Below, in pieces: positions 6,095 to 62,660 of a DNA stretch of 64,000 nt. The translations under genes were made by a program, and so were the position numbers. The DNA lies in the IMG/VR virus record IMGVR_UViG_3300044625_001067, positions 62,001-126,000 of that record; one strand, written 5' to 3'. The notes under the pieces were generated by a model. That model did not search any database. It saw nothing but the letters and a program-made list of their open reading frames with translations, and had not been told where the DNA came from. Position 1 is the first letter of the stretch; each line of letters starts with the position of its first letter.

Positions 6095-6604
6095 TCATCG
6101 CACGTACCGTACGAGAGTGACGTCCGCAATATCGTGGCAAGACAGAGAGAAACTTTCAAGCATTTTTACTATCGTGTCTTCGTTACCGCCAGCGAGACCG
6201 CACCCAATGTATGGGAATCCTACCGCAAACTTCCCGTCTAGTGGCGCAGCTATGGCGCCGCTTCTCAAAAAAGTTTGAAAACTTTTGAGAAAGTCTCGGA
6301 AAAAGTTGTACTCGAAAATGTCTTTGCCCCTTCCGTACGAGTACTGAGTATATGCGTTGACAATGTGAAAAGTATGGTTACCGCTCCCTTGAACCTGTGC
6401 CATGGTAAAACGACCGAGTTTGCCCCGGTCCCCTTCCCGAGTGGAAAGGTCAACGCTCGCTGCTTCTGGGTGCTCACGACTTATTTGCCCTGCGATGCCT
6501 GACGCCATCTTATTAAAACAATTTGCCCCGTGGACAATAATGTCAAACTGGCCCTTGCGAGCCATTGACAACAAGTCCCCGTTGGCCCGATGAAGTGTAC
6601 TCAT
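6095..6604 (-). CDS. Macrodomain (ADP-ribose binding/hydrolase) protein
   Basis: GDLL, IVHGANCFNKMASGIA, NAYTQY, FPYIGCGLAGG. Confidence 0.9.
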   Translation of the reverse strand: MSTLHRANGDLLSMARKGQFDIIVHGANCFNKMASGIAGQISREHPEAASVDLSTREGDRGKLGRFTMAQVQGSGNHTFHIVNAYTQYSYGRGKDIFEYNFFRDFLKSFQTFLRSGAIAAPLDGKFAVGFPYIGCGLAGGNEDTIVKMLESFSLSCHDIADVTLVRYVR

Positions 6605-11679: not shown

Positions 11680-11744
11680 ACTATACCGCTTTCCTGTCGG
11701 AAAGGCAAGGGTGGGACCGCCCCATGGTAACGGGGAAACCGCCC
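11680..11744 (-). promoter_or_regulatory. Repeated early promoter element (two boxes)
   Basis: TTGCCT-17-TATAGT, spacer hairpin CTTTCC-4-GGAAAG. Confidence 0.8.
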
Positions 11745-12301
11745 TAAGGCAGTACAAAGGGTGAGTCAGGGTCGTCTGTGAAAGCAGTGAAATAGGTCTC
11801 TGTGGCCGGGTTACCCAGGTTAAGGACGGGAATGTTGTGAAACCTAGCGATGCGAATCGCCTGTGAGGTTCCACCGACATCCTTACCGTTTTTTGTCCAG
11901 CAAATTACCACGTCTGTTGGGCTCTTGCAGTCTCTCCCTAGGACTTGCATCGCGTTCCTAGCCATTAACTTTCGCCCCTTGTCATAGAGCCGAGAGGGTG
12001 CGGGATGGAACCGCTCCACGCTTTCTTGAGCTAGTTCTCGCCCTGGGCACAAAAGGTAATCAAAGTGGGATTTACCGTCGTGGTACCGTCCGTTGAATCC
12101 GTTCCACGGCAAGAATATCTCCTTTCTCCTGGAGTTTGCTTCAAAAGCCGCATCGGCGCCATCAGCACCACCCGAGCGCAGTGTGAACCCTAAACGGTCC
12201 ATCTTTGCCGAAATTCGGCCCATAAGTGCCAGGATCGAACCAGGTGTCTCTTGCCTCCCAATTCCTGTGTACACTTTCATTGCCCCTTTAGCCTCAGTCA
12301 T
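11744..12301 (-). CDS. SLOG-superfamily (DprA/Smf-like) nucleotide-binding protein
   Basis: YTGIGxxETP, LRSGGADGAD, MARN, GGTSQAIRIA. Confidence 0.8.
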   Translation of the reverse strand: MTEAKGAMKVYTGIGRQETPGSILALMGRISAKMDRLGFTLRSGGADGADAAFEANSRRKEIFLPWNGFNGRYHDGKSHFDYLLCPGRELAQESVERFHPAPSRLYDKGRKLMARNAMQVLGRDCKSPTDVVICWTKNGKDVGGTSQAIRIARFHNIPVLNLGNPATETYFTAFTDDPDSPFVLP

Positions 12302-24782: not shown

Positions 24783-24837
24783 GGCAGCTTTAGGTGGGTG
24801 GGACCGTTGAGTTTTGTTTATCTGGGCAAGGTTGGGA

Positions 24838-25467
24838 CTAGCGATTTCGTTTCCCACTGTCCCAGGCTGGCGCTGATCTCCGCTTTGGAAAGTCATGTCC
24901 AAGATCGCCTTTTACTTCCCCGTTAGCGAGGACAACAAGGTGGTCTGTGCCGTAATCGTCCCAGTCGTCGGAGAACTTCGTGTCTACTGACAGAGTAACC
25001 TTGTGCTTGTAAAGAACTTGGCCGAGATCCTTTCTAAACTCGTCCATGTCGAACTTTTCGCCAGGGGTGTACGCGTAGGACGTAACTACTTGGTCTCGAA
25101 GGAGCTGGTCCCAGTCGAGGCAGTTGTACGGGAGTTTTGTCTCTGACATGTCTTCCGGGGAGAAGCAGCTTCGTAGTGTTCTGTGATTACGCCGTTCATT
25201 CGTCCAGGTTCGATCCTCACGGACTCTTACCAGAGTGTAGCAGTATGAGGATGGAACGTTCGGGTTCGTTGCTTTCGGGTGCATCCAGATGTCGGACACA
25301 ACGTAGAGACCGTCTTTTACTGGACTCTTCCGAAAGTGAAGGTAAGGAACTTCAGTGCCCCAGGTTCGACCGTCGGGTGAATTTTTAAGTATTTTTCCAG
25401 GAACAAACACACTGTCCCCTGGCTTCAGCAAAAGTTTTCCTGTAACTGATTCAGGGGGAGACTTCAT
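24838..25467 (-). CDS. Hypothetical protein
   Basis: ORF behind promoter 25495; start moved to ATG 25467. Confidence 0.65.
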   Translation of the reverse strand: MKSPPESVTGKLLLKPGDSVFVPGKILKNSPDGRTWGTEVPYLHFRKSPVKDGLYVVSDIWMHPKATNPNVPSSYCYTLVRVREDRTWTNERRNHRTLRSCFSPEDMSETKLPYNCLDWDQLLRDQVVTSYAYTPGEKFDMDEFRKDLGQVLYKHKVTLSVDTKFSDDWDDYGTDHLVVLANGEVKGDLGHDFPKRRSAPAWDSGKRNR

Positions 25468-30177: not shown

Positions 30178-30768
30178 TCAGACATAGACGTACTCACGCC
30201 ACTCTTCAACTTCTGCTGTACTGATTGTAACAGACATCTTGCTATAGGGTGCCTTCGGCTTTGAGGCGAGAGTGGTGCCACGTCGAGTGACGCGGGTTTC
30301 CATCATCCCAATCTGAAAGCTGTCCCAGCTGAATGGTAGCGGAGAAACATTCGTGGTTTCCTTTGCAAACACCTTCTTTAGGGCAACCGCCCACTCTTCC
30401 GGGGTGCGATTGTCCTTGCAGTTGTTGCACTCAAGGCAGCTGGTGACAAGGTTTTGCCAAGTGTCCTGCCCTCCTCTTGACTTCGGTATCACATGGTCCA
30501 AGGTTAGTTTCGGACCGGAGTACTCGCAATACTGGCAGGTGTGATTGTCCCGTTTTAGAATCAAGGTGCGAGAGGGCTTCGCCGCTGCCATCTTGGCTTG
30601 GGGAACCTTAACGTATGTCTTTAGGCGAATGGTGCGGCTGGACACGACATGGGCCTTGTCCTTCAATACAAGCACTCTAGCCCTCCGCCACGAGGTCTGG
30701 TTCAAGGGTTCGTACGTGGCATTTAAAACCAGAATGGTTTTCTTGTATGCGATTGTCTTGTAGTCCAT
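30178..30768 (-). CDS. HNH endonuclease (McrA-like, LVLNA family)
   Basis: LVLNATYEP, RDNHTCQYC, TLDHVIPKSRGG, NLVTSCLECN. Confidence 0.9.
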   Translation of the reverse strand: MDYKTIAYKKTILVLNATYEPLNQTSWRRARVLVLKDKAHVVSSRTIRLKTYVKVPQAKMAAAKPSRTLILKRDNHTCQYCEYSGPKLTLDHVIPKSRGGQDTWQNLVTSCLECNNCKDNRTPEEWAVALKKVFAKETTNVSPLPFSWDSFQIGMMETRVTRRGTTLASKPKAPYSKMSVTISTAEVEEWREYVYV

Positions 30769-30867: not shown

Positions 30868-32382
30868 CTAAGCTGCGGGGTTAAGAAGTCGAGTACGAAT
30901 GTTAGGCAGTGAGTTTACATCCTCCCCGTAAACCACGCTGTTTAAGAACACGGTGCGAAGCTCGCCTCGCTGCTCTTGCTCACGAGTCTGCTGTTGATGA
31001 AGAACAAAGTTCTCCCCATCCTTTTCAACTCGCAGTAGACCCAACGCCGACTTTTTCGTGCCGCGATCCGTAATGGGATCCTTCATGGTTTCGACGGCGA
31101 GACCGTTAATTTGCCCCCAGGTTGTTTTGTAAGCAATACCGAACGTGTCTCGTGTATGGTATTGGTAGGTGTAAGAACCGATACCAAACACAATGTTTTC
31201 GGACGCCCACCCAAGCTGCCTCATGTGCTCTAGGATGGCCCTGGCCCGTGGAAGAGTGATTGAGTCGCCGTAAATTAGGCCAACTCGAGGGTTCAGTACC
31301 TTGAAACCCTTCTCGTTTATCGTTCCTCCGAAGACCTCCCAGAGAAGCTCAAGCGAGCCTTTGTACTCTCGGCTACCTAGCTCAGCGTCAGCGTCACCGC
31401 AGATGATTTTCTCAGGGTTACCGCTGTCGGGACGGAAGACGACCTTAGCGATGCCCTGAGAATTCGGACAACGATTTAAGATGTCTTCCTTAAGTGCGGG
31501 TGCAATAACAGTCAGTGCATCCCAGTAGTTCCAAGTGTCAAAAACTACACTGACCGGCCCAGTTGGGTATACTTTTGTAATAATTCGACGAATTGTCTCT
31601 AATTCGTTTCTTTGACCGCCAAGGCAGGTCACACTGTGTTCCGTAGCGGGAATACTACCACCAATGAAATTGGACCCACAATCGTAGTAATCTTCCAAGT
31701 AGTCAATGGAAAGGATTGTATCCGTGCCCTTGAAAGAAAAAAGGTGTCCGATATTGTGTGCAGCGGCATCGTAAATGCCTCCGACTCCGCGAGCGGAGAA
31801 GTCGTGCCCCTGAAAGTCAACAAACTGCGGATTACTCCCTGTGATTTCAGCGTAGTGGTCGAGAAGACGGCGAAACTCGTAGGCGATGGTTGCCACGTTG
31901 ATGGCCTTCCACAGCTCAGACGACTTGGCGGTTTCGACATAGTTGGTTAGCCACGGGGCCAGCCACTTGAAGTCATTGTGAGTGTTTTGCGCCGTCAAAA
32001 ACGGCACTCCAATGTTAACACGGCTACCCTCGGGCAGTGCCTTCACATGTAGCGGCATGTAGCCCAGGTCGTGAAGCTCAGCAATGTGGTCAGTGCCGAC
32101 AACACCTTCTCCGAGCGAGGAGTCCATTCGCCGCTTGTATTTGTCCAACACCTTGGCCTTGGGTTGCTGAAAAAAGGTCTCATTCCAAAGATCCCTCAGC
32201 ATCCATTTCATTGTCCCCTGGATGTTGGCCACGACGATCTTGTGGTCGAAGTCAGCGGGCATGTTCGCCAGACGGTCGGACCTTGCCGTCATGTTGGCGT
32301 AGATTACTTCGGTGCCTTCAGGGTTTTGCGAAGGGTGTCCTGTCTTGTAAAAGTCGGTTGCGTGGGGCGCAAAAATTTTCAT
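30868..32382 (-). CDS. Nicotinamide phosphoribosyltransferase-family protein (Nampt/NadV; Namat candidate)
   Basis: TDFYKTGH, HDFSARG, GTDT, PATEHSV, RPDSG, IYGDSIT, FGIGS, KDPITD. Confidence 0.92.
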   Translation of the reverse strand: MKIFAPHATDFYKTGHPSQNPEGTEVIYANMTARSDRLANMPADFDHKIVVANIQGTMKWMLRDLWNETFFQQPKAKVLDKYKRRMDSSLGEGVVGTDHIAELHDLGYMPLHVKALPEGSRVNIGVPFLTAQNTHNDFKWLAPWLTNYVETAKSSELWKAINVATIAYEFRRLLDHYAEITGSNPQFVDFQGHDFSARGVGGIYDAAAHNIGHLFSFKGTDTILSIDYLEDYYDCGSNFIGGSIPATEHSVTCLGGQRNELETIRRIITKVYPTGPVSVVFDTWNYWDALTVIAPALKEDILNRCPNSQGIAKVVFRPDSGNPEKIICGDADAELGSREYKGSLELLWEVFGGTINEKGFKVLNPRVGLIYGDSITLPRARAILEHMRQLGWASENIVFGIGSYTYQYHTRDTFGIAYKTTWGQINGLAVETMKDPITDRGTKKSALGLLRVEKDGENFVLHQQQTREQEQRGELRTVFLNSVVYGEDVNSLPNIRTRLLNPAA

Positions 32383-33320
32383 GGTTGGTTGCGTGGGGTG
32401 GGGTAGTTTTCGGTACGAAGGTAGGTCAAGTACGAGGGTAACTCTTGGTAAAAGGCTTTATACGGGAGCAAGTTCGCAACGAAAAAGTTGTCGATTAAGC
32501 TCCCAAACACCTTAAAACCCTTGGAGAAAATTCCGTGAGTTACATAGAGGTCAATTCGAGACGGGTCGAACTGACGTAGCACCTTGGCGAGTTCGATAAA
32601 GGTGCGACCGCCATCGCAGATGTCGTCCACAATCAGAAGGTTTTTGCCCTTGTAACTGACGTCTTCTGGAACTTCCGTCCTTAGGATTTGCCCGTCTTCA
32701 GGGTTGCGAACTTTCGTAGCGTACACTACAGAGTGGAGCCCCAGTGTTTGTTGTACGAGGGTTGCTCTTTCGACTGCACCTTTATCCGGAGCAATCACAA
32801 TTGTCTCAGCACTAAACTCTTGCCCCCGGTCTTTGAACTTCTGGAGAAACAGTTGGGGTTGTAGGTTGTTGAACTCGCAGCCGATTTCGGTTCGAAAGAG
32901 CTCATTTGCAACGTGGCTGTGCACGTCCCATGTGTACACCCGGTCGCACACTCCCTTAAGATAAGGGGCGAGAGCTTTTACAAAAGTTCTTAGCGAAAAC
33001 GCTTCCCCTTCAGCGCACTGGCGGTCTTGGCGGCTATAAGGTAAGTACGGGATGTCCAATTGTAGACTTCGCAGCACAGGAAGGTCTTTGATGGCCGACA
33101 GAGTCAGAAGAAGTTCTGCGAAACTTTCTCCGCTGTGTATGTCTGCGTCTACGATAATGTCAGTCGAATTTGTTGGAGTGTCGTGCAACCGGACCTGCCT
33201 TTCACCGGCACTGAACGTAAAGGAGGTCTTTGAAATCTTGTACAGGTTTTGTCCGTCGCGATTCGAGTAAACCTCAATCGGCTCTGTTTTCTGATACTCT
33301 TTAGTTTCGGTCACGTGCAT
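32379..33320 (-). CDS. Ribose-phosphate pyrophosphokinase-like protein (Prs family; Adps candidate)
   Basis: FSAGE, PYLPYSRQDR, DVHS, APDKGA, IVDDICDGGRTF, VTHGIFS; ATGA-coupled to the Nampt-like gene. Confidence 0.92.
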   Translation of the reverse strand: MHVTETKEYQKTEPIEVYSNRDGQNLYKISKTSFTFSAGERQVRLHDTPTNSTDIIVDADIHSGESFAELLLTLSAIKDLPVLRSLQLDIPYLPYSRQDRQCAEGEAFSLRTFVKALAPYLKGVCDRVYTWDVHSHVANELFRTEIGCEFNNLQPQLFLQKFKDRGQEFSAETIVIAPDKGAVERATLVQQTLGLHSVVYATKVRNPEDGQILRTEVPEDVSYKGKNLLIVDDICDGGRTFIELAKVLRQFDPSRIDLYVTHGIFSKGFKVFGSLIDNFFVANLLPYKAFYQELPSYLTYLRTENYPTPRNQP

Positions 33321-36678: not shown

Positions 36679-37203
36679 TTATTGAAGAGAATTCGGCATC
36701 CGTATAGGAAACGGTCACTCACCTGTTTCAAGGTGCGTTTTCCCACGGCACATTTGATTTAAGAGCGCAATGTTAGGCTCCGAGTCCTACCTTGTCTGCG
36801 AAGACAGGGAACCCACTCATAACGGGCGACGTATTTACGTCTCAGGACTTTCACAGTATATCGCTTTCTCGAATTGGTAAACTACCCGGCGTTGAAGGCG
36901 ATAGGTATGTGTTCCACGCAATATTCACGGAATAATTCTTTCGTTTCTTCCCAGCTTTCCTCGCTCGCTGGCTTCCCGAGTGCGGCTGCGGCTTGAGGAA
37001 TGTTTCACTGGGCTGTGAAGAGCTTTTCCATTGCCCAAGTATGATCAATGTCTTTCACTACCCTTCTTGGGATTCCTTAACCGTGGTCTTTCACTCGGAG
37101 GTGAAACCTCAAAGTAAACATCTTGCATCCTCTCTTTCAAGCCTGACTCAGGCTTGGGGGGTGTTTTCTCAATGTCCTTCATAGTAAGTGTTTAAGGTGA
37201 AAA

Positions 37204-38124
37204 CTAGTCGAGTTCAACGACAAGAACGCCGTCTTCTCTTTTTGTAACTTTGCGAACGGTTTGTTCGGTGTTTCGAGGTAAGATAGCCTCATTTTCATAA
37301 GGTACATCAGAATACATGTTTACCGGAGTTAAACTTCTATTCTTTGAGACAAACAAGACACTTCTAGACGTTCTGGAAGCACCAAGGAAACCATTTGCAG
37401 TCTTTTCGTCTAAGGAATAGGACCCGAAACCGGGGTCTTTTAGAACGGACCCAGGGGTCAGTTTTTCCACTTGGGCGTACAAGTCAGCGGATTTTAACGG
37501 GAAATTAACCCCACGATAGAATGAGATACCTTCATTGTTTTTCGGGAGCTTACCTAGAGCTGAATCAAATTCTTTTACAAACTCCTTAGTGATCTCAGGT
37601 TTTTTGCAAGTGGGAGGGTTTCTTAAACAGGCGTTAGTCTTTTTGTGCGGGCGGTCAGACATGTCTGAGGGGGCTGTGTAGTCATAAACGGATTTAGCCT
37701 CCGCGCTACTTAGCTTAACCTTTCTTTGTGCTTCGTTTATCCTTGTAAGGACTTCTTCATGTGTGTCTTTCTTTGACACCTTTTGTTGGTTGTCCTGTGC
37801 TAGCTTATCTGTAAGCTTTTCGAGAGAGGAGTTCAGTTCAATGGGTATCTTTTTACTTGGCTTAACCTTCGCCCCGGTACTCTTTGTTTTTCTCGGCGTC
37901 TTAGTGGCTTTCGCACGCTTAGGCTTTTTAGTTGCCACCTCTTTCGCTTGCTTTGTACCTTTCCTGCACTTTCCAGAAGTCCCGTACGCAGTACCGTCCT
38001 CTCGAACACAACGAGTGTAGTCGTACGGCTCTAAGCCTAGCTCAGAGAAGTTACAGGACGATAGTGCTCCAACCATCTCTTCGCACTTCCTTAGCGATTG
38101 CTCTGAAAAAGACCCTTGGCTCAT
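37204..38124 (-). CDS. Tag-fused ADP-ribosyltransferase (R-S-E clade, VIP2/Alt-like)
   Basis: N-terminal RCVREDGTAYGTSGKCRKG tag; C-terminal FYRG, GFGSYS, ENEAILPR. Confidence 0.85.
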   Translation of the reverse strand: MSQGSFSEQSLRKCEEMVGALSSCNFSELGLEPYDYTRCVREDGTAYGTSGKCRKGTKQAKEVATKKPKRAKATKTPRKTKSTGAKVKPSKKIPIELNSSLEKLTDKLAQDNQQKVSKKDTHEEVLTRINEAQRKVKLSSAEAKSVYDYTAPSDMSDRPHKKTNACLRNPPTCKKPEITKEFVKEFDSALGKLPKNNEGISFYRGVNFPLKSADLYAQVEKLTPGSVLKDPGFGSYSLDEKTANGFLGASRTSRSVLFVSKNRSLTPVNMYSDVPYENEAILPRNTEQTVRKVTKREDGVLVVELD

Positions 38125-38195
38125 AACTGCGACTACTCTTATAAACAAACTTACCCCTAATGCACCCACGACGGGGGTGAGTTTTCAATGAGGAC

Positions 38196-38351
38196 TCACA
38201 GAGTCGATTTGTATCGGTTCAACCCTTTCAGAAAGGTTTTCATGTCTGGGGCCTGCGCAGCATCCTGTCGAAATTGCTCGCGGGAATCAGCTGCAATATT
38301 CTGAATGAGTGCCGCGAGAGTGCGACTGGTTGTGGGGTCGTTAAGGTTCAT
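38196..38351 (-). CDS. 51-aa helical protein coupled to the upstream ART-like gene (not in ORF track)
   Basis: MNLNDPTTSRTLAALIQNIAADSREQFRQDAAQAPDMKTFLKGLNRYKSTL; ATG 1 nt after the upstream stop. Confidence 0.65.
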   Translation of the reverse strand: MNLNDPTTSRTLAALIQNIAADSREQFRQDAAQAPDMKTFLKGLNRYKSTL

Positions 38352-38352
38352 T

Positions 38353-39552
38353 TTAGTCCGGTGTTAATTCAGGGTCGTTCGCTACGATGATTGCTCCACG
38401 GTTGAGAACAACCCAGAAGTCTTGGCCATCGGTCTGTGGAACTCTATACGCATGTATTCCCAGAGATGCAGCGGCTGACCCCACATCGTGATGGTCGTAC
38501 CCCGTAATCTCTCTTGCTTTCTGCAGGGTCTCTCCTTCCCACTGCCTAAACTGCTTCCCGTCTCCCTCAAACTGTACGAGTCGAGCGTCGGACCGGAATG
38601 CAAACGCTGAAACCCTTAGTGTTTTATTTCCACTTTCCCCAGAGTAGTCTTTCGCTGTATCTTGGGCCCATCTATCATGCTTAACCTTGCCAGATAAAGG
38701 GGAAGAAGCAGAGTAACTCCCACTCCCGTAAATCCCGCCACCAGGAAAGTGCTTGTCTCCGTCTGGACCACCACCTTTGAACTGCAAGGAAAACTCATTT
38801 GAACCTACGCCGCGATAAGCCACAATTGGCCTTCCGTCGGGGTTCCGGGCTATATCTTTTCTTGATTCCAGTTCCGATCGTGTTGCAACAACCTCCGGTC
38901 GAGCATGAAAACCTTGCCGTTCGTACACAGAAGTGAGAATCGGCGGTAACAAGGTGCCCTTGCGAGCACTCGAAAGTGTTCGACCGAGCTCCATACCTTC
39001 CTTTTGCAGATGTAAAAGCTTCTCTCTTGACACGTCGTCGGTAGGCTCTCCTATTGCTCGGACTCTTTTCTTCAGTGCTTCAAGTTCCTTTTCGAGAAGC
39101 TCAACCTCTTTCTCAACCGTGGCTTTCAGTAAAGGTTTGCTCGATCCAGGTGTTTGCGTGTACTTCGGCGAGTTTCTCACCAATTCGTCGTATTGATCCT
39201 GAAGGGCACCCTTTTGTTGTGTTTGCTCTGCCTTCTTCGCCAAGTGAGTCTTTAGGCGAAGATACCGTAAGGCGGTAAGGGCACTCTCTGTGAGGGGTGT
39301 GCGGTACCCTGGCTTTGACAAAAGCATTCCCTCAAGAGTCCTTAGATTCTTGTTTAGAGCGTCAGGATCATTCTTTTCGTAAATCTTGACATTTTTGAGA
39401 ACAGACTCTCTTCGAGTGCTACGGTCTTCTTTTGCGGACTCCACTCCCTTGCGACATTGTCCTGCTGTACCGTACACCCCACCGTCCGGTTTCACACAAC
39501 GTGTAAAGTCGTGCACAAACGCTAGGGTATCGGGGGAAATTTCTCCGTACAT
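38353..39552 (-). CDS. Tag-fused protein with C-terminal ART-like fold
   Basis: N-terminal RCVKPDGGVYGTAGQCRKG tag, coiled coil, then AYRG...GGGIYGSGSY...AKDY...WVVLNR. Confidence 0.65.
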   Translation of the reverse strand: MYGEISPDTLAFVHDFTRCVKPDGGVYGTAGQCRKGVESAKEDRSTRRESVLKNVKIYEKNDPDALNKNLRTLEGMLLSKPGYRTPLTESALTALRYLRLKTHLAKKAEQTQQKGALQDQYDELVRNSPKYTQTPGSSKPLLKATVEKEVELLEKELEALKKRVRAIGEPTDDVSREKLLHLQKEGMELGRTLSSARKGTLLPPILTSVYERQGFHARPEVVATRSELESRKDIARNPDGRPIVAYRGVGSNEFSLQFKGGGPDGDKHFPGGGIYGSGSYSASSPLSGKVKHDRWAQDTAKDYSGESGNKTLRVSAFAFRSDARLVQFEGDGKQFRQWEGETLQKAREITGYDHHDVGSAAASLGIHAYRVPQTDGQDFWVVLNRGAIIVANDPELTPD

Positions 39553-39582
39553 TCGTACAACCGAACTAAGCACCAGGGTACT

Positions 39583-39990
39583 TTACCCCTCCGCGTGGTT
39601 CACCAAGCGGCCTTCCCGCATTAGTGAGAAAAAATGTGAAGCTACCGTTTGCCCCTTGATGTCCACCGGCGTAGCCCTGAGGGGAACCCACAGAGGGAAC
39701 TCAGAGAGCACATAGCGGTGGTCTTCGTCGACCAGGCACGCTAGGGCACTGGGGTCAAACCCCTTGTAGTCTGGATCGTGAAATTCTACCACCGAGAGTC
39801 CGTAACTCCGAAGAACACACGAGAGTTGCAAAAGCTCCCATTTGCTCTCAACCGACAGCCACACAAAGGGTGGGTGTTCCTTGGCTAAAGACTCAGGGTG
39901 CAACCTCGCAAACTCGACTTGTGCGTGAGCCGCCTGAATAGCTTGCTGAGCAGGGTCAAGGTCGCGGCGTGTGATCGCGTAGAAATGCAT
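39583..39990 (-). CDS. Peptidyl-tRNA hydrolase 2-like protein
   Basis: YAITRRDL...QAIQAAHA, F.DPD...ALA, L..FPL. Confidence 0.65.
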   Translation of the reverse strand: MHFYAITRRDLDPAQQAIQAAHAQVEFARLHPESLAKEHPPFVWLSVESKWELLQLSCVLRSYGLSVVEFHDPDYKGFDPSALACLVDEDHRYVLSEFPLWVPLRATPVDIKGQTVASHFFSLMREGRLVNHAEG

Positions 39991-40018
39991 TTGCGGTTTC
40001 GAGAGCTTAAGTAAGGGT

Positions 40019-40062
40019 ATTATACGTTATTTCAGAGTAGAAACAAGGGGGGAAACCGTCCC
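40019..40062 (-). promoter_or_regulatory. Repeated early promoter element
   Basis: TTGTTT-16-TATAAT, GGGACGGTTTCCC box. Confidence 0.7.
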
Positions 40063-40887
40063 AAACGAAAGGTCGTACAAAGTGCTCGCTATGAGCAAAA
40101 GTCTTTCGCTGTCGTGCAACCCCGAAACCCATCGCTTAGGAATAGCCTTGTAACCGTAGTAAGCACCTGCTAGCTGCCCCGTAATCGCAGCAACCGTGTC
40201 TGAGTCGTCCCCGTAGTTCACAGCCTGCAGGATGGCCTCTTCAAAGGACGAAGTTGACCCAAAGTGGTAGAGTGCGGCGTTTAAGGACTTCGGTGCGTAC
40301 CCGGAATTTTCAATTCCCTCCGGCGAGACTTCAGGTTTTCCCCCCGTGCCATTTAAGTATTGGTGCAGCAAACGACCGAGATCTTTGCATAGGTCGGATG
40401 CCAAGTGGCCATGGGTTGTTGATGATGACGCGTCACACGCTGCTACAGCGTCCTGCTCACTTGACTTGTGGTACACAATAGAAACGGGGGATAAACGCAT
40501 CAAAGACCCGTTTCCTTTCGAATTCTCCGGATAGAGACTCAAAGACCCCTCAACGAGAAAAGTCTCAATTGCACGAAGTGTTCCATTGCCGATGTCAAAA
40601 CAGACACCTGTTGAGCTGTTCCTTCCGTACTCGTACCAGTTGGAGTACCGACGCATTTGGTCTCCAAGATTGATCTGCCCATTGCAATGAATAAAAGACT
40701 CGGCAAGGCAAACAGCCTGCGATGTGTCGTCCGTCCAGTAGCCTGACGGCAGATTAAAGGGCCCCCCTGCTCGGTAACCTGTGACGGTCTCAAAGGTCCC
40801 CGGTGGAGAGAACTCCACTGGCGCACCCATCGCGTCACCGATCGCAAGGCCAATAAAGGCTCCGAGGCATTTGTCGAAAGTTGTCAT
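40027..40887 (-). CDS. ADP-ribosylglycohydrolase (DraG/ARH family)
   Basis: GLAIGDAMG, WTDDT, GNGSLMR, TTH, GDDSDTVAAITGQLAGA. Confidence 0.93.
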   Translation of the reverse strand: MTTFDKCLGAFIGLAIGDAMGAPVEFSPPGTFETVTGYRAGGPFNLPSGYWTDDTSQAVCLAESFIHCNGQINLGDQMRRYSNWYEYGRNSSTGVCFDIGNGTLRAIETFLVEGSLSLYPENSKGNGSLMRLSPVSIVYHKSSEQDAVAACDASSSTTHGHLASDLCKDLGRLLHQYLNGTGGKPEVSPEGIENSGYAPKSLNAALYHFGSTSSFEEAILQAVNYGDDSDTVAAITGQLAGAYYGYKAIPKRWVSGLHDSERLLLIASTLYDLSFGTVSPLVSTLK

Positions 40888-40977: not shown

Positions 40978-41673
40978 CTATGCACGGGGGAACTTTCCTC
41001 GAAAAGATATCTTAGCGTCAAACCCCTTCTGCACGAGTCGATCCTTGTCCGATACACTCACAGGCGGAACACTGTCTGGGCTATCCCTCAGCGAGGCCAT
41101 AAACATTGATATATTTTGGTACATTTGCTCAGCCGGAATTGCTGAGGCGAATCCCAACTTCCCAAGGATTGGGATCTCGCGACTTACGGCCACTTGAGGC
41201 GACTTTTTGAGTCCGCTGAACCTCGGAGTGGGCTCTATCACGAATACGGGAACCTGAAGTTGTCTTGAGATATCGACACAACTTTTGTTCGGAACTCCCC
41301 ATATTTCGTCCATCCTAATTTCTTCGAACCATCTTCGGTGGCTGCTGTGTACCATGCGCAGAGAGGGGTGGTCTTCTGTAATTAGTCTCCAATCAGGAGT
41401 AAAACTTATCTTTGAGACAAGAAGGTACAGCTCTCCGCAAACTGAGCACCACTTAAACGCCCACGGAAGGATCTCCCCGTAGTAGTCTCTTCTGGTGGGT
41501 ACTTCTGGTATGCGTTCGGTTTCGTTGACGTTTACGTACACATTCGAAGAGTCCGGTTGGTCAGGCTGTGACAGCTCTTTGCGAACGTAAGTGTTCGAGG
41601 GGTCACCACCTTCTTGAGAGTACAAATACTCCACATAGTCGTAGTAGTCCTTGAATTTTGATTGGATCTTCAT
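40978..41673 (-). CDS. Conserved phage hypothetical protein
   Basis: MKIQSKFKDYYD start and KGFDAKISFR end. Confidence 0.75.
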   Translation of the reverse strand: MKIQSKFKDYYDYVEYLYSQEGGDPSNTYVRKELSQPDQPDSSNVYVNVNETERIPEVPTRRDYYGEILPWAFKWCSVCGELYLLVSKISFTPDWRLITEDHPSLRMVHSSHRRWFEEIRMDEIWGVPNKSCVDISRQLQVPVFVIEPTPRFSGLKKSPQVAVSREIPILGKLGFASAIPAEQMYQNISMFMASLRDSPDSVPPVSVSDKDRLVQKGFDAKISFRGKFPRA

Positions 41674-42384: not shown

Positions 42385-42715
42385 TGTAAGGGGGCCGAAA
42401 CCCCCGAGTTATGAGTCAGAGTGCGGTTGCTCAAACGGCAACGGCAATCCTCTCGAATTTGACGATGTTGTTAGCGTCTATTTTGTGCTTATGCAAGCGG
42501 CTTTCACTCAGGCGACATCTTTACCCTAGCGAGACCATGGCACCCCCTTGACTAGAGGTGGGAGTTTAACCCACAGTGACCCTGCCTTCTCAGTAAGTCG
42601 GAAGGTTGAAGAAGGGACGGTCACGTTCTCAAATGGAGGTGAGGGGATTCGAACCCCTGTATAGGGCACTATCTTCCAGAGCTACACCCAGTTTAATGTC
42701 GTGTGGTAGGACTGT
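42385..42715 (-). ncRNA. ssrA: Permuted two-piece tmRNA (outer ends approximate)
   Basis: T-arm AGGGGTTCGAATCCCCT plus CACCTCCA (ends 42634) precedes the 5' strand GGGGGTG (starts 42547), giving G3.U70; tag ORF 42431-42475 ANNIVKFERIAVAV*. Confidence 0.9.
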
Positions 42716-44959: not shown

Positions 44960-46102
44960 TCACCGGTTCTCAATACAACCGAGACTTTGAAATTTTTCCA
45001 CAGTCTCAGCACAGAGAGTGTTGATGAGTTGGTCATCTACCGTGTTCGGCAAGACGCACTCGTTCTTCCCCACGTGCTCAGCCTCCTTAAAGAGCTGAGT
45101 TACAATTGTGCTTAGTTCGTCATACGTAATCCTGCCGTACTTAATGTCCAGAAGAAAATCTGCGTCCCCAACCAACTTTCTATTCACAAGAAGCTCTCCG
45201 GTTCGCATTCCCTCAATGGCCATTTTCATAAGTCGAACACAGTGGCTGGCGTTCTTCCCGTCGTACCCACAGGCCCGCTCAATTTCGGATCGCTTCACAT
45301 TCCGATTAGTCAACCAATCTTGGTAATTACTCCACCGTTTTAAATCTGACCGGTACTGTTGGCTTGAGTGGAGAAGGGCCATGTACTCATCGCTTGCTCT
45401 CGTGATTTTCTGTGTTTCATTGAAGCACTCCTCCGGTAAGACACTCTGCTTCAAAATTCCTTTCCAATCAACACGGTCGTTGAGAAGCTCGTACAGCTCG
45501 ACTGAAGGTTGGTAGTACTCGATTCTGTCTTTAATCAGCAAGTACAAGTACTCGATGAAAGACTCGATTTGAGACGGGGTTAAGCTCGGGGAAGAGACAC
45601 CGTAGTCCTCCCACTCCGGTCGCCGTGTTGGAGGGTTTAAGAGCCATTTGCGGTGAGTCTCCATTTTCTTGATCTGGGACCTTGCGTACTGAACGAATGT
45701 GCCAGAGATTCTCCTGGAAATTAGCTTCCTCCGGTTGTCAATTAGCGACTGCCCCAGAAAGTCAAGGTACAGGTAGCTGTCGGGAGTCTGCCAGAGCATC
45801 TCCAAAATGTTGGGGTTTTGCGACCGCAACAAGCTCAGGTACCTGCGAATGCCGTACACCACTGAATCCGAGTTATCTAACTCAGGGAATCTAGAGTTGA
45901 ACTCACCCTCGTCTTGTTGCTCCCCTACCCACCCCTTATCCTTTTGCTCAAATGTTTCGAGAGTGGTGTAAAACCGCTGTGGCGCCACACAGATTCCCTT
46001 AAAGTCCAAGTCGGACATCTCGGTGTTGAGGCCATAGGCGTGGCTGCCTGACTTGCAAAACAGGATCATCCCGTCTTCAATTTCTTTTCGTGTAATTGTC
46101 AT
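44960..46102 (-). CDS. Pol-beta-superfamily nucleotidyltransferase (RlaP/YcgL-like)
   Basis: GSHAYGLNTEMSDLDFKG, NPNILEML, GYDGKNASHCVRL. Confidence 0.88.
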   Translation of the reverse strand: MTITRKEIEDGMILFCKSGSHAYGLNTEMSDLDFKGICVAPQRFYTTLETFEQKDKGWVGEQQDEGEFNSRFPELDNSDSVVYGIRRYLSLLRSQNPNILEMLWQTPDSYLYLDFLGQSLIDNRRKLISRRISGTFVQYARSQIKKMETHRKWLLNPPTRRPEWEDYGVSSPSLTPSQIESFIEYLYLLIKDRIEYYQPSVELYELLNDRVDWKGILKQSVLPEECFNETQKITRASDEYMALLHSSQQYRSDLKRWSNYQDWLTNRNVKRSEIERACGYDGKNASHCVRLMKMAIEGMRTGELLVNRKLVGDADFLLDIKYGRITYDELSTIVTQLFKEAEHVGKNECVLPNTVDDQLINTLCAETVEKFQSLGCIENR

Positions 46103-59331: not shown

Positions 59332-59405
59332 CGCCCTGTGCAGGATTTGAACCTGCGACATTCTCTTTAGGAAAGAGATGTTCTAATCCACTGAACTAAC
59401 AGGGC
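59332..59405 (-). tRNA. tRNA-Arg(CCT)
   Basis: Cloverleaf; anticodon arm TCTCT-TTCCTAA-AGAGA; T loop GTTCAAATC; no encoded CCA. Confidence 0.92.
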
Positions 59406-59477
59406 TTTTGGCTTAAGTCCGTATGCTTCTTGCAAAGGGCAAACCGGACTCAGTACGATGGTAACCTTATGGGGTTA

Positions 59478-59551
59478 CGCCCCCTAGAGGATTCGAACCT
59501 CTGACACCACGGGCCGAAACCGTGTGCTCTAATCCGCTGAGCTAAGGGGGC
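59478..59551 (-). tRNA. tRNA-Arg(TCG)
   Basis: Cloverleaf; anticodon arm CACGG-TTTCGGC-CCGTG; GTTCGAATC. Confidence 0.92.
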
Positions 59552-59837
59552 TTGGCTGCATAATGTGCCGGGGGTGACTACCCCATTTGACGTGCAAATC
59601 TTCCGGCGGAACTCACCTTTACCCCTGGGTGGGAATAGACGGGGAAGTGAATTTGCCCATCCAAGAAAACTAACCTGTAGTGGTTCTTAACAAGGAAGTT
59701 TTCGAAGTTTGTAGCGTTCAGAGTCTCAATTCGCCTTAGCGTCTCAAGGGTTTTGCAATGATTTTGTAGCAGAGTAACTTGCCTCTGCAACGCCACGTTT
59801 TTGTTGTGCAATTCCACGTTTTGTTTTCTCATGTGCG

Positions 59838-60371: not shown

Positions 60372-60396
60372 TGGTTCGACTGGCTCGACTGAATTA

Positions 60397-60461
60397 ATCA
60401 TACCGTTTCTGCAGAGCGAAAACAAGCGGGGAAACCGTCCCAGATGAAACGGTTTACCGCC
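60397..60461 (-). promoter_or_regulatory. Repeated early promoter element (two boxes)
   Basis: TTGTTT-17-TATGAT. Confidence 0.8.
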
Positions 60462-60845
60462 CTCTCACCCCCGAAGCTACTCAGGAAGCAACCGCAACGG
60501 TAGGAACTAAGGAAGTGTCCCGACCCGCTTGAGCCTTCATTGCAGAGCGAGCACGAAGCATCGCCTGAGCCTGCAGAGCTGCGTCGTTGACGGTTAGCTG
60601 CAGGGCGGAATGGCGACTGGTGTAGGAGCCGTATGAGCGCCCGTACTTGCGGTTCCACTCATCTTGGCGTTCTTGCGGCCAGACGTAAGAGAACACAGGA
60701 AGCTCTTCAATGCTTCTTTGAGACTCTTTAATTTCCATTTTACGAGTGCGCTGACGCTCGCTGAGCTGAGCGTAGGTAGCTTGCCATTCGGCAACTTCAC
60801 GCAGGTATGTGTCGCGGTCTTGCATTGTTTTGTAAGGTTGGTTAA

Positions 60846-61810: not shown

Positions 61811-62608
61811 TCAGCCAAGGTGATCCTTTGGGGTTCCCCTTGAGGGAAGTTCCCCGAATAGAACAACGTACCAGTCTCTCAAACTTCCAGGGTTCTCGGA
61901 GAAGGAATGCGGTGGTTCAACGCCACCACCTTTGCGAACCTGGCCGACCAGTTGTCCATCCCCCTTGTCTACAAAGCCTATGCGCTCGTATGCTTTCTTG
62001 CGTTTGTCTCCTCTGCCGTCCTCGTCGTAGGCGTAACAATGAATGACATCACCGGGGCTAAGAGACTGCGTGAGGAGCCCAAACATACGTCTTACGGTGA
62101 GTGCCGCTTTGACTTTGTCGCGAGGGTCTTCTATACTACCGTAGTCGTACTCGCCATTTACAAGAAAATCAACTTCCTTCGTGTTCCCCTTGAACTTTAG
62201 GGAAACTTCGTCAAAGTCGTTCAGTCTTCTCTTTAAGGATACAAAAGTCTGGTTCGACACGACAACTGTGGACCCATCGTCTAAGTTTCGTATGTTGTTG
62301 GCCTTGTCACGATTTAGGTTAAACCTCTTGATAGCAATATCTCGTCTTTCGGGCTCATCAACTAGCTTTTCATTAATCTGTTTGGTCCACCAGCGATCTT
62401 CGTACTCTTGTTCCTGTTTCTCCTCGTCGGACCTCTTCACCGCCCTGCGCAGGATTTCCTTCGCCTGCTCTACACCTTTACGGCACTTTCCCGATGTCCC
62501 GTACGCAGTACCGTCCTTCCTAACGCAACGTGCGAAGTCGAGCGTGTAACCCTCAGGCAAAAGTTGCGAGAGTTTTTGAAAACTTTCGTGAGAAAAAGAA
62601 CTTTGCAC
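61811..62608 (-). CDS. Tag-fused protein with possible GNAT-like C-terminus
   Basis: N-terminal RCVRKDGTAYGTSGKCRKG tag; C-terminal R.KAYERIGF. Confidence 0.7.
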   Translation of the reverse strand: MQSSFSHESFQKLSQLLPEGYTLDFARCVRKDGTAYGTSGKCRKGVEQAKEILRRAVKRSDEEKQEQEYEDRWWTKQINEKLVDEPERRDIAIKRFNLNRDKANNIRNLDDGSTVVVSNQTFVSLKRRLNDFDEVSLKFKGNTKEVDFLVNGEYDYGSIEDPRDKVKAALTVRRMFGLLTQSLSPGDVIHCYAYDEDGRGDKRKKAYERIGFVDKGDGQLVGQVRKGGGVEPPHSFSENPGSLRDWYVVLFGELPSRGTPKDHLG

Positions 62609-62660
62609 TTGAAGATGGCACTCTTACAAATTTACCCTCTTACCTGGAAATCATCCGTAA

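What the first reader, a model, noticed from the sequence alone, without database searches (positions are those of the whole stretch)
37204..40887. ADP-ribosylation writers next to an eraser
Seen: two ART-fold genes lie within ~0.5 kb (one intervening gene) of a DraG/ARH hydrolase, with a macrodomain at 6095 and a SLOG protein at 11744. Established: ExE ARTs modify arginine and DraG/ARH1 hydrolases reverse it, while macrodomains reverse other linkages such as DarT marks. Inference: a timed, reversible host-takeover circuit whose released ADP-ribose could be recycled by the NARP1-like pair.
Basis: partly seen in the sequence, partly recalled or inferred. Interest (0 to 1): 0.6.

Follow-up and report, generated by a model that had tools for sequence, protein, structure and literature searches.

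The report
Phage ADP-ribosyltransferase effector cassettes beside a hydrolase
A 277-kb lake cyanophage carries two ADP-ribosyltransferase genes next to an ADP-ribose-removing hydrolase, but each transferase belongs to a large family of swappable effector genes that share an undescribed N-terminal leader and have their own small partner gene, so the hydrolase is an add-on and not their fixed eraser.

Summary
On the minus strand lie a DraG/Tri1-like hydrolase (40027-40887), a PTH2-like gene, a divergent ART-fold gene (ART2, 38353-39552) and an R-S-ExE ART (ART1, 37204-38124). A NARP1 pair, a probable macrodomain and a DprA/SLOG protein lie elsewhere in the window.

The writer/eraser circuit is only partly supported.
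- ART1 sits in a 1,160-bp cassette that very close relatives lack, although they keep DraG.
- ART2 occurs without DraG in most relatives.
- DraG occurs without an adjacent ART in one relative.
- Nothing here shows timing.

What is there instead:
- Both ARTs start with a roughly 60-aa leader, followed by a basic linker. Fourteen genes of this genome share it, as do about 970 protein clusters in metagenomes. No Pfam or PHROG family covers it.
- The cargo attached to the leader varies: ARTs, kinases, mostly unknown domains.
- Each ART type is followed by its own 45-57-aa ORF.
- In other phages the ART2 domain plus that small ORF is attached to a MuF head protein.

My best reading is polymorphic effector-plus-partner cassettes, probably delivered with the virion, with DraG as an accessory arginine-ADP-ribose eraser. 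This is a new variant of a known kind.

The parts
40027..40887 (-). DraG/ARH-family ADP-ribosylhydrolase, 286 aa from ATG 40887. Closest solved relatives are T. thermophilus ARH and the Tri1 immunity hydrolase. It has no Tri1-type N-terminal extension.
   Evidence: Pfam PF03747 3.5e-61. PDB matches 2cwc 3e-63, 6dre 6e-56 and 2woc 5e-33, with the GDAxGAPVE, TDDT and GDDSDT segments aligned. 6DRE is Tri1, acting on protein-Arg-ADPr.
39583..39990 (-). PTH2-like (peptidyl-tRNA hydrolase 2 fold) protein of 135 aa. It recurs next to ART2-type genes and next to DraG in relatives.
   Evidence: Atlas feature score 0.93 to PTH2 clusters. No Pfam or PDB sequence hit. Homologues lie next to ART2 in L006, L008, L010, L024-29 and L066, and next to DraG in L068.
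38353..39552 (-). ART2: a short leader (residues 1-~40), a helical middle part, and a divergent ART-fold catalytic domain (38356-38961). Conserved YRGV, GxGxYGxG[ST]Y[AS]A, [EQ]D[YF]W and LNRGA; no ExE.
   Evidence: Alignment A1. Model pLDDT 89. Foldseek and VIA hits are all ART superfamily, with Z up to 7.8. Atlas TM 0.78 to a MuF-fused viral domain. phrog_16619 1.9e-11.
38196..38351 (-). 51-aa partner ORF of ART2 (MNxNxPxxSRxLAxLIQ...), starting 1 nt after the ART2 stop.
   Evidence: A homologue lies beside the ART2-type gene in all 33 IMG/VR loci: directly after it in 32, upstream of it in L041. Homologues also follow both paralogues in this genome (alignment A2). Complex prediction gave weak support: ipSAE 0.37 against a best control of 0.04.
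37035..38194 (-). ART1 cassette, a 1,160-bp presence/absence polymorphism holding the upstream motif, ART1 and its small partner ORF.
   Evidence: Replaced by 31 bp in L011-13. Both alleles occur in lake RNA-library contigs X15/X16, and the stretch is uncovered in X17/X18 (the X17 loose end at 38195 matches the 31-bp filler).
38148..38156 (-). GGGTAAGTT motif 32 nt before the ART1 start. The same motif precedes ART2 (39580-39588) and the leader gene at 62608 (62629-62637).
   Evidence: Three of the five matches in the window lie just upstream of the three leader genes. Ten of 14 leader genes in the genome have it.
37204..38124 (-). ART1: leader (MSQGSFSE...YDYTRCVREDGTAYGTSGKCRKG), a K/R/P-rich linker, then an R-S-ExE mono-ADP-ribosyltransferase domain.
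   Evidence: Pfam PF03496 1.2e-13 and PF01129 1.7e-5. R, S and ExE are invariant in 8 leader-ART1-type proteins of 34-46% identity. Best PDB hit is VsdC 3nts at 0.009.
37045..37182 (-). 45-aa partner ORF of ART1 (..GLKERMQDVYFE..), inside the cassette.
   Evidence: Homologous 47-49-aa ORFs directly follow the ART1-type genes in L070, L071 and L073 (alignment A7).
61811..62608 (-). Third leader-bearing gene of the window (265 aa), cargo unknown.
32379..33320 (-). Adps-like (PRPS-like) gene of the NARP1 pair.
   Evidence: Pfam Pribosyltran 5.6e-12, Pribosyltran_N and Pribosyl_synth. phrog_619 8e-65. PRPS structures score only 2.5e-17.
30868..32382 (-). Namat-type nicotinamide ADP-ribose transferase of the NARP1 pair.
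   Evidence: Pfam NAPRTase 8.6e-33. PDB 9W5X/9W5W (phage Namat) 5e-129 against human NAMPT 1e-55.
6095..6604 (-). Probable macrodomain protein.
   Evidence: phrog_335 2.6e-38. Pfam Macro 0.011, below cut-off. PDB 2dx6 0.0036.
11744..12301 (-). DprA-like (SLOG superfamily) protein.
   Evidence: phrog_768 7.8e-54. No Pfam hit.

Best explanation
The stretch is a variable effector island of a 277-kb freshwater jumbo cyanophage related to Synechococcus phage S-CBWM1.

It holds two cassettes built like polymorphic toxins. Each encodes a protein made of three parts: a shared leader of about 60 aa (M-x-G-S-F-S-E, a helix, F-S-E, then Y-D-F-T-R-C-V-R-x-D-G-x-x-Y-G-T-x-G-x-C-R-K-G), a basic linker, and an ADP-ribosyltransferase cargo. 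Each is followed by a cognate ORF of 45-57 aa.

Shown:
- the architecture of the cassettes;
- 14 leader genes in this genome, and about 970 protein clusters elsewhere with varied cargo;
- the intact R-S-ExE site of ART1;
- the ART fold of ART2;
- attachment of the ART2 domain plus its small ORF to MuF head proteins in other phages;
- the strain-level gain or loss of the ART1 cassette;
- the intact DraG/Tri1-like hydrolase.

Inferred:
- the leader takes the place of MuF as a module that loads the effectors into the capsid, so that they enter the next host with the DNA, as T4 Alt does;
- the small ORFs neutralise or chaperone their ART in the producing cell;
- ART1 modifies arginines of host proteins;
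- DraG is an accessory, broad arginine-ADP-ribose eraser acquired by this sub-lineage. It would limit or reset ADP-ribosylation in the infected cell, whether made by the phage's own ARTs or by host ARTs, and it is not the fixed partner of either ART;
- NARP1 could regenerate NAD+ from the ADP-ribose and nicotinamide released, but it is conserved independently.
For: Identity of the phage:
- One contig of 277,244 bp, 98% complete by CheckV.
- psbA matches at 3e-170.
- Portal is 61% and MCP 62-78% identical to S-CBWM1.
- Found in lake metagenomes of 14 or more studies.

Leader:
- 14 genes in the genome carry it.
- A profile of the leader finds 973 clusters at E<=1e-3 and 520 at E<=1e-10.
- The core sits at median residue 36, 138 cargo regions fall into 59 clusters, and the next 40 residues carry a median net charge of +4.
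- Recognisable cargo among the best 146: 7 ExE ARTs and about 6 kinase-like domains. No Pfam or PHROG family covers the leader.

Partners:
- An orf51-type ORF lies beside the ART2-type gene in all 33 IMG/VR loci (directly after it in 32) and follows both paralogues in this genome.
- An ART1-type partner is present in 4 of 4 loci examined.
- Complex prediction for the ART2 domain with orf51 gave weak support: median ipSAE 0.37, best control 0.04, partner pLDDT at least 64, and the three runs did not agree (0.57, 0.00, 0.37). In the tool's calibration 58 of 80 solved complexes and 2 of 110 mismatched pairs reached the mark.

Link to MuF and to ejection proteins:
- Atlas TM 0.78 to a cluster in which every member carries Phage_Mu_F.
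- L046 and L043 carry Pfam Phage_Mu_F (2.6e-16), an ART2-type C-terminus and the small ORF.
- MuF toxins with small immunity ORFs, thought to be delivered on injection, are described in PMC5576092.
- A fold match to ejection protein chain B of the cyanophage A4 pre-ejectosome, Z 7.2.

DraG. Synteny.
Against: - No virion proteomics exists. The S-CBWM1 leader gene gp165 is annotated only 'hypothetical', while neighbouring genes are labelled 'virion structural protein'.
- Leader genes lie scattered among metabolic genes, not in the head module.
- The shared upstream motif is not found before the sheath, portal or capsid genes, so late expression is not shown.
- The leader model is poor (pLDDT 65).
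- The complex prediction is only weak, and one of three runs gave 0.00.
- ART2 lacks a canonical catalytic Glu. An Asp is nearly invariant, and one homologue has Asn. It may therefore be an NADase or an unusual transferase.
- DraG recurs near ART2-type or PTH2-like genes in two further lineages (L065, L066, L068). A closer functional tie than 'accessory' is therefore possible.
Confidence: 0.5

Rival explanations
1. DraG is the dedicated eraser of marks written by ART1 and/or ART2. It is timed to reverse host takeover, and NARP1 recycles the released ADP-ribose.
For: - The genes are adjacent on one strand.
- ART1 has the ExE motif and the hydrolase is Tri1/DraG-like.
- All near-identical strains with ART1 also have DraG.
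- DraG lies directly upstream of a leader-ART2 gene in an independent lineage, L065, with DraG 61% and ART2 51% identical.
- ART-ARG pairs in Aeromonas phages are described in PMC9503650.
Against: - DraG persists where ART1 is absent.
- Diverged ART1-type loci lack DraG in the flanks held.
- 30 of 33 ART2-type loci lack DraG within 6 kb.
- L068 has DraG without an adjacent ART.
- Each ART has its own small partner.
- NARP1 is present in relatives without DraG at the locus.
- There are no timing data.
Confidence: 0.25
2. DraG is a counter-defence enzyme, an orphan antitoxin-like eraser aimed at host arginine-ADP-ribosylating defence toxins. It sits next to the ARTs only because accessory genes collect in this island.
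For: - A precedent exists in phage NADAR AdfN, which reverses DarT1 marks (PMC11825919).
- DraG occurs in the same island without an adjacent ART in L068.
- Its relatives form a graded series in phage-like contigs, and cellular homologues reach 45-48% identity, including one from Cyanobium.
- The island's content varies between relatives.
Against: - No host ART defence system is identified here.
- DraG recurs near ART2-type or PTH2-like genes in three lineages.
- Iyer et al. argue that phage ARGs act on macromolecular adducts, without naming their source.
Confidence: 0.25
3. The leader is not a packaging signal. It is a docking or regulatory module that brings different enzymes to one host or phage hub, or controls their stability, and the effectors act in the cell where they are made.
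For: - Leader genes are scattered outside the structural module.
- gp165 of S-CBWM1 is not annotated as a virion protein.
- 20 of 146 family members carry two copies of the Cys-pair core, some of them internal.
- The upstream motif looks like a -10 element (TAAAAT or TAAAGT) and could be an early promoter (the reading of the element is mine).
Against: - The same ART2 domain with the same small ORF is attached to MuF head proteins elsewhere.
- The basic linker resembles DNA-associated internal proteins (inference).
- Effector-plus-small-ORF cassettes are typical of delivered toxins.
Confidence: 0.3
4. ART2-type domains are not protein ADP-ribosyltransferases. They are NAD+-degrading enzymes or enzymes that modify nucleic acids, or they are inactive.
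For: - There is no ExE or QxE motif. The position holds a nearly invariant Asp, and one homologue has Asn.
- Structural neighbours include MbcT, RES and RhsP2 as well as diphtheria-type toxins.
Against: - Strong conservation of YRGV, the Gly-rich S/T-Y loop and LNRGA over sequences of 35-93% identity argues for activity.
- The best Z scores are to protein-modifying DT/ExoA toxins.
- A phage that carries NARP1 to rebuild NAD+ is an odd carrier of an NADase.
Confidence: 0.15

Closest known systems
MuF polymorphic toxins of phages (Jamet et al. 2017, PMC5576092; for example the EFV ART toxin)
   Same: A variable C-terminal toxin domain (14% of them ARTs) is followed by a small ORF taken to be immunity, and delivery with the injected DNA is proposed. 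The ART2-type domain and its small ORF occur on true MuF proteins in L043 and L046.
   Different: The window's proteins have no MuF domain. A leader of about 60 aa stands in its place. The genes are not next to the portal gene. There are 14 such genes in one genome. The phage is a jumbo cyanophage in which I noted no lysogeny gene, whereas MuF toxins were reported only in temperate phages.
T4 Alt (head-packaged R-S-E ART with a capsid-targeting sequence), ModA and ModB
   Same: ART1 is an R-S-ExE ART of a myovirus-type phage, with a weak match to the Alt-like phrog_802 (3.9e-4). Host takeover by arginine ADP-ribosylation is the established role of Alt.
   Different: The match to phrog_802 covers only part of that profile. 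Packaging is unproven. No T4-type prohead protease or gp23 family was found. T4 encodes no DraG-type hydrolase (my knowledge).
Tre1-Tri1 (a T6SS ART toxin with a DraG-like immunity protein) and DraT-DraG
   Same: The hydrolase matches Tri1 at 6e-56 and DraG at 5e-33 with the metal site intact. Both reverse arginine ADP-ribosylation made by a neighbouring ART.
   Different: The alignment starts at Tri1 residue 68, so the N-terminal extension that occludes the toxin is absent. The writer-eraser pairing is not conserved across relatives.
Phage ART-ARG pairs and virion-packaged NAD+/ADPr enzymes, and polyvalent proteins (Iyer et al. 2022, PMC9503650)
   Same: Those authors already report an ART-ARG pair in Aeromonas phages, ARG in about 5% of jumbo phages, and frequent head packaging of ARTs in myoviruses.
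   Different: They describe no leader module or small-partner cassettes in the passages I read. Here the effectors are stand-alone proteins and not domains of one giant polyvalent protein. ART2 gives no ART-PolyVal hit at E<=0.1.
NARP1 (Adps + Namat; Osterman et al., bioRxiv 10.1101/2024.02.11.579819)
   Same: An overlapping PRPS-like and Namat-type gene pair, with the Namat best matched by the solved phage Namat.
   Different: Its shown role is to counter host NAD+ depletion. A link to the ARTs or DraG is inference only, and the pair is conserved in relatives that lack DraG at the locus.
AdfN, the orphan NADAR antitoxin-like eraser of T4-like phages (PMC11825919)
   Same: A phage-borne ADP-ribose eraser acting without a cognate toxin, as a counter-defence. 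It is a model for the rival reading of DraG.
   Different: It has a different fold (NADAR) and a different substrate (DNA guanine).

Membership tests
R-S-E (ExE) arginine-specific mono-ADP-ribosyltransferases (Pfam ADPrib_exo_Tox / ART): ART1 | Profile match above the curated cut-off | tested here: met
   PF03496 scores 51.3 bits (cut-off 23.4) and PF01129 scores 24.7 bits (cut-off 22.3).
R-S-E (ExE) arginine-specific mono-ADP-ribosyltransferases: ART1 | Catalytic Arg, Ser (S-x-S) and Glu-x-Glu | tested here: met
   The R of FYRGV, the S of GSYS and ENE are invariant in 8 sequences of 34-46% identity.
R-S-E (ExE) arginine-specific mono-ADP-ribosyltransferases: ART1 | NAD+-dependent transfer of ADP-ribose to arginine | not testable with these tools
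   This needs an enzyme assay.
ART superfamily fold: ART2 C-terminal domain | Split beta-sheet ART fold with an NAD+ cleft | tested here: met
   Model pLDDT 89. The 50 best VIA rows are all ART-superfamily or ART-like toxin chains, Z 7.8 to 2.4. The best row aligns 141 residues at rmsd 3.6. Foldseek probabilities reach 0.97 but no E-value is below 1e-3.
ART superfamily: ART2 | Canonical catalytic triad (H-Y-E or R-S-E) | tested here: inconclusive
   R (YRGV) and an S/T-Y strand are conserved. The third position is a nearly invariant Asp preceded by E or Q, and one homologue has Asn.
ART-PolyVal (PF18760): ART2 | Profile match | tested here: not met
   No Pfam hit at E<=0.1. Atlas TM is only 0.44-0.46 to ART-PolyVal clusters.
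DraG/ARH ADP-ribosylhydrolases (PF03747) | Profile match and conserved binuclear metal-site residues | tested here: met
   207.8 bits against a cut-off of 26.2. The segments GDAMGAPVE, WTDDTS and GDDSDT align with 2cwc and 6dre. The E-D-D motif is listed in PMC8120803.
DraG/ARH ADP-ribosylhydrolases | Hydrolysis of arginine-linked ADP-ribose | not testable with these tools
   Inferred from the nearest characterised relatives only.
Tri1-type bifunctional immunity proteins | N-terminal extension that occludes the toxin's active site | tested here: not met
   The query aligns from Tri1 residue 68 onward, and the phage protein has no extra N-terminus.
Toxin-antitoxin-like ART/ARG pair (DraT-DraG, Tre1-Tri1) | Conserved co-occurrence of writer and eraser across relatives | tested here: not met
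   DraG occurs without ART1. ART1-type genes occur without DraG. ART2-type genes lack DraG in 30 of 33 loci. DraG occurs without an adjacent ART.
MuF polymorphic toxins | N-terminal MuF (PF04233 / PF06152) domain | tested here: not met
   No MuF hit in ART1, ART2 or the other leader proteins. It is present in the homologous L043 and L046 proteins.
MuF polymorphic toxins | Variable C-terminal toxin domain followed by a small ORF | tested here: met
Head-packaged internal proteins (T4 Alt / IP type) | Presence in virions and processing of a targeting sequence | not testable with these tools
   No proteomics data. T4-type protease and capsid families were not found, although the control genomes did not ring either.
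NARP1 | Adjacent PRPS-like Adps and Nampt-like Namat genes, with the Namat closer to phage Namat than to Nampt | tested here: met
Macro domain (gene at 6095-6604) | Profile match above the cut-off | tested here: inconclusive
   Pfam gives 16.2 bits against a cut-off of 22. phrog_335 scores 2.6e-38. PDB 2dx6 scores 0.0036.

The most novel reading that the evidence does not exclude
The roughly 60-aa Cys-pair leader is an undescribed, portable capsid-loading and ejection signal. It lets S-CBWM1-like cyanophages arm each virion with an exchangeable arsenal of a dozen or more effectors (ARTs, kinases, unknown enzymes). Each effector travels as a promoter-effector-antidote cassette that is gained and lost between strains in the same lake. 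DraG-type hydrolases serve as a broad back-up eraser.
Probability: 0.35. Interest if true: 0.8.

Novelty: new variant of a known kind. Interest (0 to 1): 0.6.

Why it matters
If the leader is a delivery tag, it marks out about a thousand mostly unknown phage effector families in freshwater and marine viromes, each with a candidate neutralising partner. It would also give a ready tool for loading foreign cargo into cyanophage capsids.

The locus is a natural test bed for how a phage keeps several ADP-ribosylating enzymes, an arginine-ADP-ribose hydrolase and an NAD+ rebuilding pathway in balance. The coexistence of alleles with and without ART1 in the same lakes shows effector turnover in natural populations.

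For the original claim, the lesson is cautionary: adjacency of a writer and an eraser here does not reflect a conserved pair.

Tried and rejected
- Megablast of the locus against isolated phages found nothing. The phage is uncultured.
- Searches for the T4-type prohead protease (PF03420) and gp23 (PF07068) in the genome found nothing, but the control genomes did not ring either, so this is uninformative.
- I first took the GGGTAA[AG]DT motif for a late promoter, because it precedes the tape-measure gene and a tail-fibre-assembly-like gene. I dropped that reading. The motif is absent before the sheath, portal and capsid genes, and its count in the window is not above chance (5 found, 2.96 expected). 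Only its association with leader genes stands.
- The sigma-70 and terminator scan of the locus gave nothing above the shuffles.
- The leader fold had pLDDT 65, too poor for a fold search.
- Sequence searches of PDB with ART2 and the PTH2-like protein gave nothing.
- Whole-contig searches of the 241-282 kb metagenomic relatives were not possible. 'No DraG' in them therefore means none within the 10-kb flanks held.
- RNA-library contigs cover DraG, ART2 and ART1, but they cannot show strand, level or timing, and may include DNA.
- A search of the contigs of L011-13 for ART1 found none, but those records are only 24-67% complete.
- Neighbours of the hydrolase in Serratia phage BF and Aeromonas phage PX29 are unannotated, and I did not analyse them further.

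Full report
**What the window is.** It is bases 62001-126000 of a single 277,244-bp viral contig, rated 98% complete by CheckV. Nearly all genes lie on the minus strand. The genome encodes PsbA (phrog_182, 3e-170). Its portal, capsid, sheath, tape-measure and sigma-factor proteins are 32-78% identical to those of Synechococcus phage S-CBWM1 (annotation). The locus is held by lake-water metagenomes of at least 14 studies and by lake metatranscriptome libraries. It is therefore an uncultured freshwater jumbo cyanophage. Megablast against isolated phages finds nothing.

**Observation check.**
- ART1 (37204-38124, minus strand) matches Pfam ADPrib_exo_Tox (1.2e-13) and ART (1.7e-5).
- The hydrolase (40027-40887) matches ADP_ribosyl_GH at 3.5e-61. 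Among solved proteins it is closest to T. thermophilus ARH (2cwc, 3e-63), Tri1 (6dre, 6e-56) and DraG (2woc, 5e-33), with the metal-binding segments aligned. Tri1 and DraG remove ADP-ribose from protein arginine (PMC8120803).
- ART2 (38353-39552) has no Pfam hit. Its last 202 residues, folded with 24 homologues, give pLDDT 89. An exhaustive structural search returns only ART-superfamily or ART-like toxin chains: cholix, exotoxin A and diphtheria toxins at Z 7-7.8, then PARPs, MbcT, ParT, RES and Rhs ART toxins (Foldseek agrees weakly).
- The intervening gene is PTH2-like.
- The NARP1-like pair is real. A PRPS-like gene overlaps a gene that matches the solved phage Namat (9W5X/9W5W) at 5e-129, against 1e-55 for human NAMPT.
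- The macrodomain is probable but below Pfam's cut-off.
- The 'SLOG' protein is DprA-like.

**ART1.** Eight leader-ART1-type proteins of 34-46% identity keep the Arg, the Ser and both Glu of ExE invariant. The enzyme is therefore under selection as an ExE-type ART, a class that modifies arginine.

**ART2.** The family conserves YRGV, a glycine-rich loop ending in [ST]-Y-[AS]-A, [EQ]-D-[YF]-W and LNRGA. There is no ExE or QxE motif. Its chemistry and target are open.

**A leader shared by many genes.** Both ARTs begin with the same module. It consists of M-x-G-S-F-S-E, a predicted helix, a second F-S-E, and then Y-D-[FY]-T-R-C-V-[RK]-x-D-G-x-x-Y-G-T-x-G-x-C-R-K-G, followed by a K/R/P-rich stretch.
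- Fourteen ORFs of the genome start this way, including one more in the window (61811-62608).
- Their C-termini differ. One is ART1, three are ART2-type domains, one is a protein-kinase-like domain, and the rest are unknown.
- A profile of the leader finds 973 clusters (at 50% identity) with E<=1e-3 and 520 with E<=1e-10 among 1.84 billion proteins. Almost always the match is at residues 1-65 of proteins 75-709 aa long.
- Among the best 146, the core sits at median residue 36. The 138 cargo regions of 60 aa or more fall into 59 clusters, and the 40 residues after the core have a median net charge of +4.
- Recognisable cargo is mainly ExE ARTs (7) and kinase-like domains (about 6). No Pfam or PHROG family is shared by the set, so the leader is in neither library.
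- Among 50,697 isolated phage records, a search with ART1 found its leader only in S-CBWM1 gp165, two genes upstream of the tail sheath gene.
- The leader alone folds poorly (pLDDT 65).

**Each ART has a small partner gene.**
- The ART2-type domain has three paralogues in the genome, each followed by a homologue of the 51-aa ORF at 38196-38351.
- All 33 IMG/VR loci with an ART2-type domain, down to 35% identity, carry a homologue of this 49-57-aa ORF. In 32 it directly follows the ART gene, usually with overlapping stop and start. In L041 it lies upstream of the ART gene.
- ART1 is followed by a 45-aa ORF (37045-37182) with the motif G-L-K-E-R-M-Q-D-V-Y-F-E. Homologous 47-49-aa ORFs directly follow three diverged ART1-type genes.
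- Leader-kinase genes have their own small downstream ORFs.
- A complex prediction of the ART2 domain with its partner gave weak support. The median ipSAE was 0.37 (runs 0.57, 0.00 and 0.37, so the runs did not agree), the best control was 0.04, and the partner pLDDT was at least 64. In the tool's calibration 58 of 80 solved complexes and 2 of 110 mismatched pairs reached the mark, and passes at or below 0.60 are weak.

**Link to head proteins.** The best structural match of the ART2 domain in the ESM Atlas (TM 0.78 over 182 residues) is a cluster of 748-aa viral proteins that all carry Phage_Mu_F. The 754-aa and 819-aa proteins of L046 and L043 carry Pfam Phage_Mu_F (2.6e-16), an ART2-type C-terminus and the same small ORF downstream. 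MuF proteins are portal-associated minor head proteins. MuF proteins with C-terminal toxins and small immunity ORFs have been described as polymorphic toxins, probably delivered with the DNA (PMC5576092). The ART2 domain also resembles part of chain B of the cyanophage A4 pre-ejectosome (Z 7.2). One effector-plus-partner unit is thus attached either to MuF or to the leader. That is my main reason to infer that the leader is a capsid-loading module. It is an inference, not a result.

**Comparative genomics of the island.** The island lies between a conserved 231-aa gene (40978-41673) and a lysozyme/DPBB pair, and it differs between relatives.
- Three relatives of 241-282 kb have PTH2-like, leader-ART2 and the small ORF, with no DraG and no ART1 domain.
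- Relatives 92-100% identical to the window have DraG, PTH2-like, ART2 and the small ORF, but not ART1.
- The window and at least 16 contigs have all of these plus ART1.
- ART1 with its upstream motif and its small ORF is an exact 1,160-bp insertion (37035-38194) replacing 31 bp.
- Both alleles occur in the same lake samples. Two older samples have no contig over the cassette.
- A 268-kb relative has DraG (62% identical) plus the PTH2-like gene and no adjacent ART. An 8.7-kb contig has DraG (61%) directly before a leader-ART2 gene. A 28-kb contig has DraG 7 kb from PTH2-like plus leader-ART2.
- Three diverged ART1-type loci have no DraG in the flanks held.

DraG, PTH2-like and ART2 therefore recur together loosely. 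No writer is strictly tied to the eraser.

**Regulation and expression.** A GGGTAA[AG]DT motif lies 15-36 nt before the three leader genes of the window and before 10 of the 14 in the genome. It is absent before DraG, the PTH2-like gene and NARP1. This suggests that the leader genes are co-regulated. The class cannot be assigned. The motif also precedes the tape-measure gene but not the main head and tail operon. Contigs from RNA libraries cover the locus but cannot show timing.

**How it most likely works.**
- Shown: the cassette architecture, the polymorphic leader family, the catalytic integrity of ART1 and of the hydrolase, the ART fold of ART2, the MuF connection, and strain-level turnover.
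- Inferred, with about 50% confidence overall: leader proteins are loaded into capsids and enter the next cell with the DNA. The small ORFs hold their ART in check, or escort it, in the producing cell. ART1 ADP-ribosylates host arginines. DraG is an accessory arginine-ADP-ribose eraser that limits or resets modification, whether that comes from the phage's own ARTs or from host ARTs.
- ART activity followed by DraG converts NAD+ to nicotinamide and ADP-ribose, which are the substrates of NARP1. Recycling is therefore chemically plausible, but NARP1 is conserved independently of DraG.
- The rivals are listed separately: a dedicated timed circuit, DraG as counter-defence only, the leader as a docking module and not a packaging module, and ART2 as an NADase.

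**Comparison and novelty.** Head-packaged ARTs (T4 Alt), MuF polymorphic toxins, polyvalent proteins, a phage ART-ARG pair and NARP1 are all published. The following are not described in the libraries and papers I could check:
- the leader module and its spread;
- the two small-partner families;
- the mobile ART1 cassette;
- the loose trio of DraG, PTH2-like and ART2 in cyanophages.

I class it as a new variant of a known kind.

**Limits.**
- There is no experimental evidence for packaging, binding, activity or timing.
- Absence of DraG in relatives refers to the flanks held, not to whole genomes.
- Near-identical strains are not independent observations.
- The literature check covers open-access text only.

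Noticed in passing
window 42431-42689 (-): A permuted (two-piece) tmRNA gene about 1.5 kb upstream of DraG. Rfam tmRNA_permuted scores 67.9 bits (7.7e-12), and ARAGORN gives the tag ANNIVKFERIAVAV. Together with the PTH2-like gene, this points to a ribosome-rescue theme near the ARTs.
   Followed up: partly
window 59332-62733 (-): Three tRNA-Arg genes (CCT, TCG, TCT) and a tRNA-Met. The tRNA-Met lies directly upstream of the leader gene that starts at 62608.
   Followed up: no
L001:12659-13000 and L001:13082-14500 (genome 269903-270244 and 270326-271744): A leader-only ORF of 113 aa is followed, 80 nt later, by an ART2-type ORF of 472 aa that lacks a leader. This may be one effector gene split by a stop or frameshift, or a two-piece version.
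   Followed up: no
genome 137066 (-), L062:409-1566; also P0029 and L041:5746-6636: A second kind of N-terminal module, Cys-rich (C-x2-GK-x-CG-x-SC...C). It heads a kinase-like protein of this genome and ART2-type proteins of other phages. It may be an alternative leader.
   Followed up: no
proteins P0054-P0072, P0086, P0123: Twenty of the 146 best leader-family proteins carry two copies of the Cys-pair core, the second one internal at residues 107-362.
   Followed up: no
genome 193031-195483 and 187321-189849: The matches to the S-CBWM1 major capsid protein and to the head peptidase each fall into two pieces 1.4-1.5 kb apart. This suggests inserted introns, inteins or homing endonucleases. 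S-CBWM1 itself has group I introns in psbA.
   Followed up: no
window 134-1612, 23670-24902, 44960-46102 (-): A set of RNA-repair-type genes: an RNA-binding protein (phrog_850), an Rnl1-type RNA ligase (phrog_562) and a nucleotidyltransferase (phrog_388).
   Followed up: no
window 30178-30768 (-): An HNH endonuclease lies directly after Namat. It is conserved at that place in all relatives examined.
   Followed up: no
L073:5202-7130: In a relative, a second ExE-type ART and a leader-kinase sit side by side just upstream of the ART1-type gene and psbA. The ART has a leader variant (WDFVRCQRPDGTFYG...). This is a denser effector cluster than in the window.
   Followed up: no
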